64,000 nucleotides of DNA. Origin: Perkinsela sp. CCAP 1560/9. Lineage: Eukaryota; Protista; Euglenozoa: Kinetoplastea. The DNA lies in NCBI GenBank assembly GCA_965644495.1, contig CBFFSA010000014.1, forward strand, positions 124,001 through 188,000. The letters run 5' to 3'. Position 1 is the stretch's first letter, and each line of letters starts with the position of its first letter. The position numbers were made by a program, and so were the translations under genes. Positions 247-49,354 of this stretch are shown one piece after another. The notes under the pieces were generated by a model. It saw only the letters and a list, made by a program, of their open reading frames with translations, was not told the DNA's origin and did no database searches.

Positions 247-560
247 CGCTTCCACTCCTTCACCCCTTCCTGACTCACTCCCTGGAGCGAGTGTGCTTCC
301 ATCTCTCGGCCTCTCTTCCTCCCGTTCCTGCCTTTCCGAGGAGGCAATGCGTCACGGTGGCCTCCCTTGAGGACCACTAGACGTGTCCTCCGCCGACGAG
401 ACTCTCGGCTCTCTGCACCTGGCGGTCACCCAGCTCTCTGCACCTTGGCCCTGTCGCAGCTCTCTGCACCCGGATTGCCCCCGAAACTGTAATATGGGGA
501 TTACGCATCCGGCTCTCTGCGCCTGCACGAGATATGCTTCTTTGCATTTGTTTTTGTGTA
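247..560 (+). mobile_element. Diverged relative of the structured SINE-like element (conserved head plus a short GCTCTCTGCACC repeat array)
   Basis: 247-385 aligns to the reverse complement of 2573-2709 (shared core ATGCGYCAYGGTGGCCTCCCTTGAGSACCACTRGRCGTG). GCTCTCTGC(ACC) occurs at 408, 433, 459 and 512. The right boundary is approximate. Confidence 0.6.
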
Positions 561-2184: not shown

Positions 2185-2324
2185 AGAAAAAAATACACAA
2201 AAAATAATTTTTTGATGTTCATGCGCTCGTTGGCGCAGAGATACAGCCCTTGATGCGACAGCCGATATCATCGGCACAATCCGTATTGACGGATGTCGCA
2301 CCAAGGGGGTTTAGCTCGGACTCT

Positions 2325-2543
2325 GTCGGTAGAGGGGGTCCAGGCAACTCGCCCTCTCTTTACGCAGCCGGAGGGGCGCACTGCAACCGACTCGGTCCCA
2401 GTCGGTAGAGGTGGTCCAGGCAACTCACCACCTCTTTACGCAGCCGGAGAGGCGCACTGCAACCGACTCGGTCCCAGTCGGTAGAGGTGGTCCAGGCAAC
2501 TCACCACCTCTTTACGCAGCCGGAGGGGCGCACTGCAACCGAC
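2325..2543. repeat. 76-nt tandem repeat, 3 units
   Basis: Units GTCGGTAGAGGTGGTCCAGGCAACTCACCACCTCTTTACGCAGCCGGAGGGGCGCACTGCAACCGACTCGGTCCCA start at 2325, 2401 and 2477. Confidence 0.95.
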
Positions 2544-2833
2544 CGCTGCCTCGCGATAAGACGAGGCAGAGCCACGCCCAGTGGTGCTCAAGGGAGGCCA
2601 CCATGGCGCATGGCTCCCCGGGAAGGAAAGGGCGCGAAGGGAAGAAAGCCGGGGAGGGAAGAAAACCCACTCAAGGAGTGAACCGGGGAGGGGCGATGGG
2701 GTGGAAGCGCGTCCCCTACTTCGCCGAGAAAGAGGGACAGTTTCGGCCTTAGTGCCGGCCGGCAGCGGGCATATAACAGTAAGACTATGCCCGTTGCCGG
2801 GGAAAGAAAAGATGAACTAAAGGGAAAATGTAC

Positions 2834-2861
2834 CAACAAGGTACAGAAACTGTATCTTTAT
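2834..2861 (-). other. Spliced-leader (mini-exon) 3' segment
   Basis: Minus strand reads ATAAAGATACAGTTTCTGTACCTTGTTG|GTAC. It contains the kinetoplastid SL core GATACAGTTTCTGTAC with the terminal TTG at the correct spacing. Confidence 0.85.
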
Positions 2862-3209
2862 TTGAAGAGTATGAGGCAAATAAACGAGATGCAGCGCACC
2901 TTCGATTTTACCAAGGCCCAAGAAAGCGTTTTTAGCTTTGGGAAAAAGTTCCACTTCATTAATGAATCTTCCCATGTACTTAAAAACGGAGGGATTCGGA
3001 TCCCATTCGAATGGTTTCTTCCAGTTTAGCTCCGATACTTCGCCTCTTTCATTGCACTTCACGTAAGCCCACTCACAGGCTGGGGTACTACTCTTCCATG
3101 ACGGATGCGGATTCGTAATATCTTGCACAAGATCCGCAAGTTCTAGTTCTTGTGGGCGATTCGCAGAACTTACCTTAGCGACACGAGGCGTGACTTCTGG
3201 AACATCCAT
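2862..3209 (-). pseudogene. LRR-family gene truncated by the SL-headed element
   Basis: Family N-cap PQE..L...HPSW....ACEWAYVKCNERGEV..LNW and first repeat LPHTLQ, after which the sequence switches abruptly into the SL. Confidence 0.8.
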
Positions 3210-3743
3210 GAGATAGAATAAATAAAAGAAGGGGTAATCTAATATTAGTATATTATATAGGGGTGTTGTATTATCCAAAAGAAGTGCTGTGTAGAAAGTA
3301 TACATACAGTGATGTTGAGCGGCATTTCTCGCTTTACAGATCGTGAATGTTCTTTGATCTCGAAGATATTTTGTGTACAACCGTTTTTCGATCCCAGCGT
3401 TCCATATCCGCTGTCCTTTTCACTCCAGTGAGTGACTTACACAAAGTGTAACAAACACAGAAAATAGGGTTATACATTTAGATGTGTTGACGCCTGGGCT
3501 CAATGATGCGAATTACGTCCCGCTTGCAGTCAAGCAGTCAAGAGGATTTTGCAAGCTTACTTCGATCTTGTTTCTTAAAAATTAGAATTGAGAATATTAT
3601 AAAATTTGAAAGATTCGATCAAAATAAAAGTTAGCCCCCGAACCCCGTAGCGCACGAAGATTTAATGATTCCTACATTTTGGGAAAAATAGGCGGTTAAA
3701 TCTTTTTGGAAGCGAAACATCCCCTGGTCATAATATTATCAAA

Positions 3744-39060: not shown

Positions 39061-39248
39061 GCATTTTCTGCGTGGGGGCGGCCTTTTCTCCTGGGACAAC
39101 TCACATCTTTTGATGTGTATCATTCGTATTAACATACATTGTTGTTCTGAGAATAAGAACACGTTCTGGTTCTCAGAACCAAAGAACACTGTTTTCAGAA
39201 CGTCGAGAACACGTGGATTTAACTCAGCGGTCGTCATCTCCTCTTGAG

Positions 39249-39274
39249 AAAGATACAGTTTCTGTACCTTGTTG
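39249..39274 (+). other. Spliced-leader 3' segment at the 5' end of a LINE
   Basis: AAAGATACAGTTTCTGTACCTTGTTG, identical to 2834-2859 reverse-complemented. It is followed by AATT (no GT donor), a 39-nt UTR and ATG at 39314. Confidence 0.85.
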
Positions 39275-42200
39275 AATTATTTTCAATTTTGTACTAAACT
39301 TATCTCTCGGAGCATGTCCTCCAATGTTATCACATCTGCTCCCGACGCGCACGACGGCCTCCCTCGAGGACCTGTCAGCGCGAGGCAACAGAATTTCCAC
39401 TTCATCCAGAGTCGCGCGGTACCAGTGAAACTTCGACTCGCTTCAAGCGTTCAGTGGTCATATTTTCCGGATGCACACGCCGCGGCTGTCTTTCTTACCG
39501 ATAAGAAGTTCTTCTCGAGTGTACACACTGCCGAAGCTTCCCTAAACAAGACTCTAAAAACAGAGAACAAAAGAAGTGACGGGCTAGTCGTCGATAAATG
39601 CACAGTACAGAATGTTATGGACCATGGCGCATGCGAATACCTGGAATATAAAGAGAAGAAACCACCTCACCGCACTTTCCGCCACGCCAGCTGGACGTCC
39701 GCTTTTCACGACTCGGAGATGTGTCTCGACTCGCATTATTCGTCTCCCCAAAACTTAAGCAAGGCAGTGATGAAAAAACTAAACGGCGACAATGTCCCTG
39801 GACTGTCCCAGTATGAAATAAAACATGTAGCGCGAAGCACTGAGTCCACAAACGGGACTTGGCTACAACATCAAATCATCTACGATGCTGCATACAGGAT
39901 TCGGGAACAGCCAACAGGACCGGAAACCTCATCACAACCTACAAAGCCACGTCAACCATGCAACCACAAATGTCGCGACAAAAACTCATGCCTGCATGCG
40001 TGCTGTAAAGTCACCGCCGTGGTTAATCCGCCCACAGAAGCTACCGCCGTGGGACCGAATAGTACGGAAAGGGAGGCACCACTTGTCACAACAACGAACT
40101 CCATCCGTCACCATACGAATACGGAGACGCGAAGACCTTGCAAGCACACCTGTCGCGACAAAACAAAATGTCTACACAGTTGTTGCAAAATCGGTGTGCT
40201 CGTATCCAAAGACGAACTGATGGTACACCACGACTTGCATTCCGCACAGCCTCCAATGGATCAACCGGTTACACATACGAACTTTACCCCTGCCCACTCG
40301 ATCGATGCCCTCCCCGATATGACGACGATCACATGCACGAACACGGAAAATCGCATACACGCACATGCAATAGAAACTAACAGCTCGGAAAGGAGTCTCG
40401 CAAGACCAACACGACTTATGCCCCACACACAACCACCGCCACAAGGGAGCAACAGCGATCCTAACGCAACAGAGACGGCCAACCGGGACAACTACCGTCC
40501 ATGCAAGCATCAGTGTGGCAATAAGACTCTATGTAAGCACAAATGTTGCAAGGAGGGAGTCCGCATCAGTCCAACGGCGAATAGAAACCACTCATGGTCA
40601 TTGCGAAATCTAATTCCGTGGACATCGGCTTCCACGGATGTAACCGAAATTCCCACAGCAGAGACGCCAACCACGCGAACGGAGACCACGGAAGGGACCA
40701 TGGGAGAAATTCCACTTCCCAACACCCAGCCTCCCGGCACCGCCCCCAACGAACCGTCCCCCAGTAACGAAAATGACGTATCACGAGACGCAAGACCACG
40801 TCGTCCCTACAAGCATAAGTGTAAAGATAAATCGCAATACCAACACGCCTGCTGCCAAAAAGGCGCGCTCGTGAGAGCTGGAGAAATCGCCTGCTCTGCA
40901 ATATCCTGGACTGTACGAAACCTCCTTATACTCGATAGACCGACCCAACCGACCGCACTGCCTGCCCCCCAGGAAGTTCAACCATCCTCACAACCTGAGC
41001 CCCTCGCCGACCGCTTTCCAACAACCCCCGTCTCAGATTCTCCCCCGCATCCTGCAAACGCCGCACTGTCTACTGAACGACGCCCAGATCCGATCTCAGA
41101 CCGCTCATACCACTACGGTGCCCACACTATATTCCAACGAACCCCACGAACAAACGCATCGCATACCACACCACCCTGTCCACGCTCGGAGCTCGAGAGT
41201 TTGCTTGAAACATTCCGCACCATTCAAGGTGGACGTGCCCTGGTGCACTTTGACACTAGCCAATGGGATCTCACCATCTCAAGAATTGAAGGACGTTGCA
41301 ATGCATTCATGCACCCTCCTCGAAGTAAAGAAGACGCACTGTTCCAAGCTGAAGTCATCTCTGCCATCTTGGCTGTATCCGTCTACGAAACTGCGAAAGA
41401 GATTAACCCCACACGCGGGTTTCTACTTCGAACCCGAACAGGCAGGTCCAAACGTAGCTCACGCCCCCTTGCCATCGACCGTACCGTCAAGTCATTAAAT
41501 CTACACGTTCGTCAATTAAAACGATCACTGACCTTTATGCACGGCCCAGAGCGAAATGCCCAAAGAGGGAGGATAAAAGATAGATGGACCCACCATTGCC
41601 GCAGCCATATCATCAAAACGTTCGGGGGCCGCTCCGGGGTCAGATACCATAACCAACATCTTGTTAAAGCGTTGCCCTTCCATCTACTCGGTCGTCGCGC
41701 AGGTATTCAACGACATACTCAAATTCGGCGTATGCCCGCCGACATGGAAAACGGCCGTCACCCGACTGATCCACAAAGGAGGCGACACTAAACTCATGGA
41801 AAACTGGCGCCCAATTAGTCTTACCAGCTGTCTCGGGAAACTTTTTCACTCAATCATAAGTCATCGCATCCTCCGCCACGCCCTCGATTCTCACGCCATA
41901 GACACGTCGATACAAAAAGGTTTTCTCCCCCACATGAATGGTACTGTAGAGCACACTCAAGTTTTATGTGAACTCCTCGAATACCAAAGACGCCACAAAC
42001 GACAATACTGCCTAGCACAGTTCGACATCAAAAATGCTTTCGGGTCCGTACCCCATACTGTGCTGTTACAGGCTCTAAAATGGGCGCGCGTATCTCCAAT
42101 TATCGTTCAATACATAGAACAACTCTACGAGAAAGCATCCATCCAAATCAAGTGCGCTGAAGGTCTTACAAAACCCATCTCGATAGATCGAGGTGTATTG

Positions 42201-42610
42201 CAGGGCGACACTCTCTCCCCCATACTATTCAATCTTGCAATGGAGTTGGTTCTGCGTTTCGTTCGATCAAGCTGCCCACAATATGGGATCACATGGGATG
42301 ACAAAGAGACCTTTCTCAAAGCCTTCGCCGACGACCTTACCATCATTACGAATACCCCCAGGGAAATGCAAAATGCCACCAATGTCCTTGGAAAAGGCCT
42401 TTCCGACATTGGGATGAACCTCAACGTTAAAAAGTGCCGAATTCAGCACATGTCAATGACGCAAGACTCGGGTTATATGACTCGGCGTCCTCAGCTCACG
42501 ATCAATGGAGCTCCGATTCCCCAGATATGCGACAAAGGAAGCACCTTCTTAGGGATGACGCTTGCTCCAGGTGCACAACAAGGCAAGATTCTCTTCCAGA
42601 AAGGTAAAGT
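39249..42610 (+). mobile_element. Non-LTR retrotransposon (RLE-type, HERO/NeSL-like RT), internally deleted and 3'-truncated
   Basis: ORF from 39314 with four CxHxCxxKxxCxHxCCK motifs. RT frame from ~41585: APGSD, WRPISLT, IDTSIQKGF, FDIKNAFGSVPH, GVLQGDTLSP, AFADDL, FLG. Confidence 0.88.
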
Positions 42611-49052: not shown

Positions 49053-49354
49053 TTTTTTGATGTTCATGCTCTCGTTGGCGCAGAGATAAATCCCTTGATG
49101 CGACAGCCGATATCATCGGCACAATCCGTAATGACGGATGTCGCACCAAGGGGATTAGCACGGAATCTGTCGGTAGAGGGGGTCCAGGCAACCCACCCTC
49201 TATTTACGCAGCCGGAGGGGCGTACTGCAACCGACTCGGTCCCAGTCGGTAGAGGTGGTCCAGGCAACTCACCACCTCTTTACGCAGCCGGAGGGGCGCA
49301 CTGCAACCTACCGCTGCCTCGCGATAAGACGAGGCAGAGCCACGCCCAGTGGTG
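49053..49354 (-). mobile_element. Second, 5'-truncated copy of the structured SINE-like element (two 76-nt units)
   Basis: Colinear with 2208-2586; same A6 end; units at 49169 and 49245. Confidence 0.85.

What the first reader, a model, noticed from the sequence alone, without database searches (positions are those of the whole stretch)
2208..2861. Spliced-leader-headed, non-coding structured retroposon (SL-SINE) inserted into an LRR gene
Seen: on the minus strand the LRR codons ...CCT CAT ACT CTT CAA switch directly into ATAAAGATACAGTTTCTGTACCTTGTTG. This is followed by GTAC, a pyrimidine tract with an AG (TTTTCCCTTTAG), ~600 nt of back-to-back hairpins with no credible ORF, and CATGAACATC-A6. 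A second copy (49053-49354) ends at the same A6 in a different flank. Known: GATACAGTTTCTGTAC...TTG is the conserved kinetoplastid SL core; described trypanosomatid short retroposons (RIME, NARTc, SIDER) carry the ingi/L1Tc 77-79-nt head instead. Inference: a SINE-like family whose head is the SL. It could be (a) cDNA of a trans-spliced RNA that keeps a spare internal acceptor so each copy can be re-spliced out of the polycistron, or (b) an SL-RNA-derived SINE, since the SL is followed by GT.
Basis: partly seen in the sequence, partly recalled or inferred. Interest (0 to 1): 0.9.

Follow-up and report, generated by a model that had tools for sequence, protein, structure and literature searches.

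The report
Spliced-leader-headed SINE targeting LRR genes
Window 2208-2861 is one copy of a short non-coding jumping element whose DNA begins with the cell's own spliced leader, which is copied by R2-like retrotransposons carrying the same head and tail, and which lands at one fixed point of leucine-rich-repeat coding sequence.

Summary
On the minus strand, 2861-2834 is nt 11-38 of this genome's own spliced leader (SL). The real SL RNA gene lies elsewhere and has a different intron. After the SL come GTAC, a pyrimidine tract with TAG, about 600 nt of strongly folded non-coding RNA (z = -8.8) and a short A-rich end.

It is a SINE-like family. Subfamily A has 55 3' ends in the genome, and full-length copies average 97% identity. 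About 500 SL cores lie scattered in this 21-Mb genome.

R2-like LINEs (RT, zinc knuckle, apparent restriction-like endonuclease) carry the same SL head and the same two 3' hairpins as the SINE, so they are its likely drivers.

LINEs and SINEs insert 9 nt upstream of the conserved Asn codon of LRR repeats. They make no target duplication.

Variant copies have the SL joined after internal AGs: SL|TTCATC, and SL plus relic nt 23-38. This supports reading (a), a cDNA of trans-spliced RNA that can be re-spliced. Reading (b), an SL-RNA-derived SINE, is not supported.

How the main SL|GTAC junction is renewed is unexplained: I found no SL-less master copy. No RNA data were available.

Other agents of this scan reported the same SL-headed, LRR-targeting elements on other pieces of this genome. 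I found no published report for kinetoplastids.

The parts
2834..2861 (-). Spliced-leader relic, nt 11-38 of the 38-nt SL, forming the 5' end of the element
   Evidence: Identical to the exon of the true SL RNA gene on contig 1. 106 genomic copies have the SL followed by GGT.
2817..2833 (-). GTAC plus pyrimidine tract plus TAG: a conserved internal 3' splice-acceptor-like signal
   Evidence: G, A, C of GTAC and the TAG are invariant, and the T is kept in 9 of 10 aligned copies spanning the subfamilies. Variant copies have the SL joined right after this TAG.
2573..2816 (-). Conserved, structured 5' module. It holds a long hairpin (2800-2787 with 2772-2759) and GAAACTG (2744-2738), which is complementary to SL CAGTTTC (2852-2846).
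   Evidence: Alignment and RNAalifold: 54 predicted pairs, 12 with compensatory changes, for example CG/AU 5:5 in the long hairpin.
2325..2543 (-). Internal 76-nt tandem unit, 2.9 copies here and 2 in most copies
   Evidence: TRF, 95% matches. Typical copies are 575-584 nt against 654 nt here.
2219..2324 (-). 3' module: an upstream hairpin and the terminal motif TCTCTGC-stem-loop-stem-ATGA (2241-2219)
   Evidence: Shared with LINEs L085 and L080. Both stems show compensatory changes.
2208..2218 (-). Short terminal tail ACATC plus A6
   Evidence: Tails are subfamily-specific (ACATCAAAA, TCATAACC, TAAAACA, ACGAACAA).
2862..3380 (-). Upstream flank: N-terminal part of an LRR protein gene, cut off by the insertion
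   Evidence: ORF 2817-3380. LRRNT_2 scores E = 7e-4, 20.3 bits, just under Pfam's 20.7-bit cut-off. An LP motif ends 12 nt before the junction.
49053..49354 (-). Second, 5'-truncated copy of subfamily A
   Evidence: blastn 95% to query 276-654, same terminus.
247..528 (+). Fragment of a sister subfamily (C type) of the same SINE superfamily
   Evidence: 88-92% identical to C-type copies in L025, L049, L035, L064; 76-78% to subfamily A.
39246..42602 (+). SL-headed R2-like LINE (SL from nt 13, 5' UTR, ORF1, RT). It is damaged and 3'-truncated here, and its upstream flank looks LRR-like (VDLT codons).
   Evidence: 98% copies on contigs 9 and 7. The full copy has ORF1, ORF2 with RT and zf-RVT, and an RPDG...E...K region.

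Best explanation
The element is a non-autonomous, SINE-like retroposon of a kinetoplastid. Its RNA carries the cell's spliced leader at the 5' end because it is trans-spliced like an mRNA. It is copied into DNA by R2-like LINEs that encode RT, a CCHC knuckle and an apparent restriction-like endonuclease, and that have the same SL head.

The LINE protein is inferred to recognise the two 3' hairpins shared by LINE and SINE. It is inferred to nick LRR-coding DNA 9 nt upstream of the conserved Asn codon of LxxLxLxxNxFxG repeats, and to prime reverse transcription there.

The cDNA runs into the SL. Joining at the 5' side usually loses the first 9-11 nt of the SL. No target duplication is made.

Inserted copies can be transcribed again and trans-spliced at internal AGs, which gives variant heads.

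Shown here: the family, the SL identity, the shared ends, the fixed LRR site, the variable 5' boundary, and the AG-dependent variant junctions.

Inferred: recognition by the LINE protein, target-primed reverse transcription, and trans-splicing as the source of the SL (no RNA data were available).
For: - The true SL RNA gene has an identical exon and a different intron.
- Full-length copies at 92-97% identity all begin at query nt 1-5 (30 of them span the element; 52 matches listed in all).
- Subfamily A has 55 3' termini in the genome.
- Complete SINE-type copies begin within the SL, mostly at nt 10-12 (26 of 43), range 3-20.
- Copies more than 99.4% identical differ in SL start (10, 11, 12, 15) and in junction type, so the 5' boundary is set at each insertion.
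- Junction variants lie after AGs. SL|TTCATC occurs in at least 5 copies of two subfamilies among the first 100 places listed. SL joined to relic nt 23-38 occurs in 8 copies against 0 in the control, and one of these heads a C-type SINE.
- LINEs at window 39246, at C9:686780-690417 and at C1:3742178-3747240 start with the SL and end with the same terminal motif and upstream hairpin as the SINE, with compensatory stem changes.
- ORF2 has RVT_1 and zf-RVT, and its best solved relatives are R2 proteins at E = 1e-32.
- 23 of 43 copies have a strict LRR motif on at least one flank, with the Asn codon 16-19 nt (one at 13) after ATGA. The background is 1-2%.
- Reconstructed empty sites show no duplication. 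The LP-to-Asn spacing I tallied from the offsets is about 25-31 nt, against 30 expected.
- A retroposed SL RNA starting at nt 3 shows that SL-bearing RNAs are reverse-transcribed in this genome.
Against: - No RNA evidence. No listed run is on record as RNA holding the element, and the one possible RNA run gave no contig.
- No SL-less source copy with AG directly before GTAC was found, so the origin and renewal of the dominant SL|GTAC junction is unexplained.
- Some junction variants (SL|TACATT, SL|ATTTTCC) do not follow an AG.
- The endonuclease is inferred from a sequence motif only: Pfam and PDB gave no hit for that region.
- The 3' motif of subfamily A itself was not seen on a LINE in the DNA I could read. 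The match shown is for subfamily C and for the window's LINE family.
- The window copy has no LRR sequence downstream, and its junction lies 12 nt after the LP motif against 16-22 in typical copies.
Confidence: 0.75

Rival explanations
1. SL-RNA-derived SINE. The head is a retroposed SL RNA, exon plus the start of its intron, fused to an unrelated body. It would be propagated from an SL-RNA-like gene rather than by trans-splicing.
For: The SL is followed by GTA, as in the SL RNA (GTATGAG...). GGTAC can pair with GTACC of the SL, as in stem-loop I of the SL RNA. SL RNA itself is retroposed in this genome.
Against: Only 3 nt beyond the exon are shared. The intron-versus-body alignment is not significant: 32 of 500 shuffles score as well. 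The partner LINEs have the SL joined to AATTAT... without GT. Only two sites in the assembly have the SL gene's upstream sequence, and both are followed by the true intron. The SL|TTCATC variants need a splice acceptor.
Confidence: 0.05
2. The SL head comes from master copies embedded in SL RNA genes. An ancestral SL-gene-specific element sits right after the exon of an SL RNA gene, is transcribed from the SL promoter with the exon attached, and seeds all dispersed copies without trans-splicing.
For: CRE/SLACS/CZAR elements of trypanosomatids live in SL RNA genes (PMC12278014). The SL array here is assembled as only two units and may be collapsed, so masters could be hidden. No AG-preceded master was found elsewhere.
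Against: No such chimeric gene is in the assembly. Many unrelated families would each need their own master at the same exon boundary. Variant junctions after internal AGs and SL-relic duplications are what trans-splicing predicts.
Confidence: 0.12
3. The SL is added during reverse transcription. The enzyme reaches the 5' end of an unspliced element RNA and switches template to an SL RNA or to another capped mRNA.
For: 5' junctions show short duplications of SL pieces, such as repeated ATAAAGATA in L007, L008 and L009. Some junction variants do not follow an AG. These are typical of template jumps.
Against: In 37 of 43 complete copies, and in many LINE families, the junction lies exactly at the 3' end of the SL exon. 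That is not an RNA end an enzyme would normally jump to. AG-dependent variants fit splicing better.
Confidence: 0.08

Closest known systems
LINE/SINE pairs that share a 3' end (stringent recognition), and trypanosomatid non-autonomous retroposons RIME, NARTc and SIDER
   Same: A short, non-coding, multi-copy element that shares its terminal RNA structure with an autonomous LINE and depends on it. Like RIME and NARTc, it also shares the LINE's 5' head.
   Different: The head is the cell's spliced leader, not a tRNA/7SL/5S promoter and not the 77-79-nt ingi/L1Tc hallmark. The partner carries a restriction-like rather than an AP endonuclease. There is no target duplication. The target is a fixed point of a coding repeat.
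CRE clade: SLACS, CZAR, CRE1, CRE2 of trypanosomatids
   Same: Kinetoplastid non-LTR elements with RT plus restriction-like endonuclease, site-specific and tied to the spliced leader (PMC12278014). From my own memory, they cut the SL gene between nt 11 and 12, close to where the SL relic of these copies usually starts (nt 10-12).
   Different: CRE elements sit inside SL RNA genes, make target duplications and end in poly(A). The elements here carry the SL as their own 5' end, sit in LRR genes, make no duplication and end in a short A/T-rich tail. No named CRE protein appeared among the best 120 relatives of ORF2.
R2 and other target-specific restriction-like-endonuclease LINEs (R4, NeSL, Utopia, HERO)
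   Same: The best solved relatives are R2 proteins. Other shared features are a C-terminal zinc knuckle followed by an endonuclease-like region, a structured 3' UTR without a long poly(A), strict target specificity for a multicopy sequence, and blunt or slightly deleted targets. One SINE copy sits in (TG)n, a known target type of this group (PMC4640811).
   Different: The target is a protein-coding repeat defined by degenerate codons (AAT..TT....GG......GAT), not an RNA gene or a microsatellite. The 5' end is made by SL addition rather than by co-transcription and ribozyme processing.
Dinoflagellate retrogenes with relict spliced leaders
   Same: DNA copies that begin with the SL because trans-spliced RNA was reverse-transcribed (PMC6050394, PMC12014239). 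Here 8 copies stack a fresh SL on a relic cut at an internal AG; from my own memory, dinoflagellate retrogenes show the same kind of stacked relict leaders.
   Different: Those are host genes recycled by unknown enzymes. Here the SL-headed RNAs are the retrotransposons themselves and their non-coding partner, in a different eukaryotic lineage.

Membership tests
SINE-like non-autonomous retroposon dependent on a LINE | Short, non-coding, dispersed, multi-copy | tested here: met
   575-654 nt, with ORFs of at most 113 aa. Full-length copies on many contigs and 55 subfamily A termini.
SINE-like non-autonomous retroposon dependent on a LINE | 3' end shared with an autonomous LINE | tested here: met
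   The terminal motif and the upstream hairpin are shared with LINEs L085 and L080/L081, with compensatory changes. An exact 21-nt match is seen for subfamily C. Subfamily A differs in the stem.
SINE-like non-autonomous retroposon dependent on a LINE | Head derived from a Pol III gene with an internal promoter (classical SINE) | tested here: not met
   The head is the SL exon. Rfam found no tRNA, 7SL or 5S match in the window. It is therefore SINE-like, not a classical SINE.
CRE clade (SLACS/CZAR/CRE) | Insertion at a fixed position inside SL RNA genes | tested here: not met
   Both flanks of many copies are continuous LRR coding sequence. The two SL RNA genes in the assembly are uninterrupted.
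CRE clade (SLACS/CZAR/CRE) | Target-site duplication and poly(A) tail | tested here: not met
   There is no duplication; my tally from the offsets puts target loss at about 0-5 nt. Tails are 7-11 nt and subfamily-specific.
CRE clade (SLACS/CZAR/CRE) | RT groups with the CRE clade in a phylogeny | not tested
   No reference CRE sequences were available by reference. No named CRE protein is among the best 120 hits.
R2-like LINEs with a restriction-like endonuclease | RT related to R2, followed by a zinc knuckle and a PD-(D/E)xK endonuclease | tested here: inconclusive
   RVT_1 at E = 4e-31, zf-RVT below cut-off, and R2 proteins as best PDB hits at E = 1e-32. The endonuclease is read from an RPDG...E...K motif only, with no Pfam or PDB hit.
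R2-like LINEs with a restriction-like endonuclease | Sequence-specific insertion into a multicopy target | tested here: met
   The insertion lies 9 nt upstream of the LRR Asn codon. A motif is found downstream in 16 of 43 copies and on either flank in 23 of 43, against a 1-2% background.
SL-relic retrocopies (dinoflagellate type) | DNA-encoded SL at the 5' end, joined at the exon boundary | tested here: met
SL-relic retrocopies (dinoflagellate type) | Stacked relics from repeated rounds, cut at an AG inside the SL | tested here: met
   8 copies have the SL joined to relic nt 23-38, that is, after the CAG at nt 20-22. The control gave 0.

The most novel reading that the evidence does not exclude
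The SL is a working part of the element, not a passive scar. The body carries an anti-SL stretch (GAAACTG) that pairs with the SL core and closes the 5' domain, and the conserved internal acceptor lets inserted copies regain a fresh capped SL.

The usual loss of SL nt 1-10 would then reflect an endonuclease that still cuts the SL near nt 11/12, as CRE-clade enzymes do. On this reading, these LRR-targeting elements descend from SL-gene-specific ancestors that escaped to a protein-coding repeat by carrying their old target as their own head.
Probability: 0.15. Interest if true: 0.85.

Novelty: new variant of a known kind. Interest (0 to 1): 0.68.

Why it matters
The element shows that, in a kinetoplastid, retrotransposons and their non-coding partner can use the host's trans-splicing to obtain a capped 5' end, and that the leader is written back into DNA hundreds of times. 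The DNA copies then act as a natural record of splice-acceptor use and of how far the reverse transcriptase reads into the capped leader. Many copies stop at nt 3.

The fixed insertion point in LRR codons would be an example of a restriction-like-endonuclease LINE aimed at a protein-coding repeat. Known targets of this group are mostly RNA genes and microsatellites. It offers a testable case of how such enzymes read a degenerate target, and a possible force behind turnover of a large LRR gene family.

The link to SL-gene-specific CRE elements of trypanosomes could also be tested by phylogeny.

Tried and rejected
- **Rfam:** a scan of the whole window at gathering thresholds found no family, so no ribozyme, tRNA or SL model matched.
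- **SL-less master copy:** searches for a copy with AG directly before GTAC found only chance-level hits. The one look-alike on contig 2 did not continue as the element.
- **SL RNA intron against SINE body:** no significant similarity.
- **RNA and population evidence:** no listed run is on record as RNA. Laying contigs of four runs gave no RNA coverage and no empty site. It showed only that a related organism has a copy with fewer 76-nt units in another flank.
- **Clade of the LINE:** ORF2 relatives are unnamed metagenomic proteins at about 30% identity. The endonuclease region has no Pfam or PDB match.
- **LRR downstream of the window copy:** none found in 1-2207.
- **Further SL stacking:** none found in the loci at hand.
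- **Literature:** searches for this SL sequence and for SL-headed retroelements in kinetoplastids found nothing. This is a limited search, not proof of absence.
- **Limits on genome reading:** Later genome work therefore used only counts and the short strings that pattern matches return. The 5.2-kb-spaced subfamily A termini at C1:394832-406849 could not be read.
- **Skipped check:** I did not run the count of structure pairs, because it would have needed a long typed structure string.

Full report
**1. Observation**

On the minus strand, the LRR codons end at 2862. From 2861 to 2834 the sequence is ATAAAGATACAGTTTCTGTACCTTGTTG. It is followed by GTAC (2833-2830), ATTTTCCCTTTAG (2829-2817), about 600 nt without a credible ORF, and CATGAACATC plus A6 ending at 2208.

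The RNA folds far better than shuffles, with z = -8.8. It holds 2.9 copies of a 76-nt unit at 2325-2543.

The copy at 49053-49354 is a 5'-truncated member with the same end. A fragment of a sister subfamily lies at 247-528 on the plus strand.

**2. The head is the organism's real spliced leader**

The window is part of a 21-Mb genome in 110 contigs. On contig 1 there are two tandem 297-bp units. Each carries AACTTTAACGATAAAGATACAGTTTCTGTACCTTGTTG followed by GTATGAGAAGCTTCG..., a typical SL RNA gene. Only these two sites have the gene's upstream sequence.

The element's head is therefore nt 11-38 of the true SL, and the sequence after it differs from the SL RNA intron. An alignment of the intron with the element body is not better than shuffles: 32 of 500 score as well.

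A genuine retroposed SL RNA, starting at nt 3 and ending in an A-rich run, lies on contig 2.

A DnaJ-type ORF in the window has its best named relatives in the EukProt entry PhF_6 (54%) and in Perkinsela (45%). That PhF_6 is a free-living prokinetoplastid is my recollection, not a tool result. This rests on one protein and is a lead, not a placement.

**3. A family**

Full-length copies at 92-97% identity all begin at query positions 1-5; 30 of them span the element. Most have two 76-nt units and measure 575-584 nt.

Subfamily A has 55 3' termini in the genome. Full-length A copies average 97% pairwise identity, up to 99.8%.

Several subfamilies share a conserved 5' module and a 3' module but differ in the middle.

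In all, about 500 SL cores are scattered through the genome: 383 and 319 in two partly overlapping counts, each of which sees three quarters of its class.

**4. Autonomous partners**

The genome is full of reverse transcriptase genes: 1072 candidates. One LINE lies in this window. At 39246 the SL, from nt 13, is joined to AATTATTTTC..., a short 5' UTR and an ATG. The RT lies at about 41770-42560.

Copies 98% identical on contigs 9 and 7 show the full plan:
- ORF1 of about 350 aa;
- ORF2 of 1139 aa with RVT_1 and a zinc knuckle;
- a following region with an RPDG...E...K pattern, which I read as a restriction-like endonuclease.

The best solved relatives of ORF2 are R2 proteins at E = 1e-32.

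These LINEs, and a 73%-identical family at C1:3742178-3747240, end in the same terminal motif as the SINE: TCTCTGC, a 4-bp stem, a 5-6-nt loop, the return stem, ATGA, then a short A/T-rich tail. An upstream hairpin precedes it. Both stems change by compensatory substitutions:
- terminal stem: GCGC/GCGC, GCAC/GTGC, GCAG/CTGT;
- upstream stem: TCCG/CGGA, CCCG/CGGG, CACG/CGTG, CGCG/CGCG.

For subfamily C, the last 21 nt match the LINE at all but one base, a C/T difference in the return stem. The SINE thus shares both its head and its tail with the LINEs.

**5. Site-specific insertion**

For many copies of all subfamilies, the two flanks join into continuous LRR coding sequence. With strict motif tests, 16 of 43 complete copies have N-x-F/L-x-G downstream, with the Asn codon 16-19 nt (one at 13) after the ATGA. 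In total 23 of 43 have an LRR motif on at least one flank. Background is 1-2%.

The junction lies 9 nt upstream of the conserved AAT. The downstream consensus is .T.....A.AAT...TT..C.GG.A...T.GAT, while the upstream side is barely conserved. This suggests recognition downstream of the cut.

From the offsets I tallied a reconstructed LP-to-Asn spacing of about 25-31 nt against 30 expected, so there is no duplication and at most a few nt are lost.

The LINEs sit at the same point. Other copies lie in (TG)n or in other repeats.

The window copy is atypical. Its junction lies 12 nt after the LP motif, against 16-22 in typical copies, and its downstream flank is not LRR.

**6. How the SL got there**

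- Many elements of other families begin at SL nt 3, often right after another element's A-run. This fits reverse transcription that stops near a modified cap (inference).
- SINE-type copies begin mostly at nt 10-12 (26 of 43), with a range of 3-20.
- Near-identical copies differ in this boundary, so it is set at each insertion.
- In most copies the SL joins the body exactly at the exon end.
- Variants have the SL joined right after the conserved TAG (SL|TTCATC). This is seen in two subfamilies and in copies 99.4% identical to ordinary ones.
- Eight copies have the SL joined to relic nt 23-38, after the CAG inside the SL. One of them heads a C-type SINE.

These are the products expected if inserted copies are transcribed and trans-spliced again. 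From memory, they parallel the stacked relict leaders of dinoflagellate retrogenes (for the SL relics themselves see PMC6050394, PMC12014239).

**7. What remains open**

- No copy with AG directly before GTAC was found, so the source of the dominant junction is unknown. Possibilities are lost or unassembled masters, masters in the collapsed SL array, or collapse of the 16-nt duplication during reverse transcription.
- Some junction variants do not follow an AG.
- No RNA data could be laid on the element.

**8. Structure of the 5' module**

Across ten copies of six subfamilies, G, A and C of GTAC and the TAG are invariant, and the T is kept in 9 of 10. RNAalifold predicts four features:
- an SL hairpin, GTACC with GGTAC;
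- a helix that sequesters the TAG;
- a 16-bp hairpin with a 5:5 CG/AU swap;
- a closing helix between SL CAGTTTC and a conserved GAAACTG about 100 nt downstream, kept in 8 of 10 sequences.

Twelve of the 54 predicted pairs show compensatory changes. The SL side cannot vary, so the closing helix is untested by covariation.

**9. Comparison and verdict**

This is a LINE/SINE system of the restriction-like-endonuclease type. It has two unusual traits: a host spliced leader as the inherited 5' end, and a protein-coding repeat as the target.

It is not a CRE-clade member by the target, duplication or tail criteria. Phylogeny was not tested.

Other agents of this scan reported SL-headed elements and the fixed LRR point on other pieces of this genome. 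I re-derived these points here on independent loci.

My limited literature searches found no published description for kinetoplastids.

Noticed in passing
L061:2250-2700 (contig 1, about 661.3 kb), minus strand: The SL RNA gene is assembled as only two 297-bp units. Each is preceded by what looks by eye like a divergent tRNA gene. The array is probably collapsed in the assembly.
   Followed up: partly
L062:1075-1185 (contig 2, about 801.6 kb): A retroposed copy of the whole SL RNA, from nt 3 to near its 3' end, followed by an A-rich run. It shows that small SL-bearing RNAs are also reverse-transcribed.
   Followed up: partly
Genome-wide: About 120 elements carry the SL from nt 3. Many lie directly after another element's A-run, in head-to-tail arrays. 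Many unrelated families share AATTATTT right after the SL. Both points may bear on target choice or on a common 5' module.
   Followed up: no
Contig 1, 394832-406849, minus strand: Four exact subfamily A 3' termini are spaced 5.2, 5.2 and 1.6 kb apart. They may be tandem LINEs carrying the subfamily A tail.
   Followed up: no
window 2852-2846 and 2744-2738, minus strand: SL core CAGTTTC is complementary to a conserved GAAACTG in the SINE body. The predicted 7-bp closing helix is kept in 8 of 10 aligned copies spanning the subfamilies.
   Followed up: partly
L007, L008, L009, L016, L017 5' junctions: Short tandem duplications sit at the 5' junction. They involve SL pieces (ATAAAGATA repeated) or the upstream flank (a 14-nt repeat in L016). 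They suggest template jumps during 5' joining.
   Followed up: no
window 41580-41790: Compared with its 98% relatives, the window's LINE copy lacks about 290 nt, which breaks the ORF. It also ends at about 42602, where unrelated repeated DNA begins.
   Followed up: partly
Run X5, organism B: A related organism or strain carries a copy of the same SINE at 95-99% identity in a different flank. It skips 152 nt, that is, it has two fewer 76-nt units.
   Followed up: no
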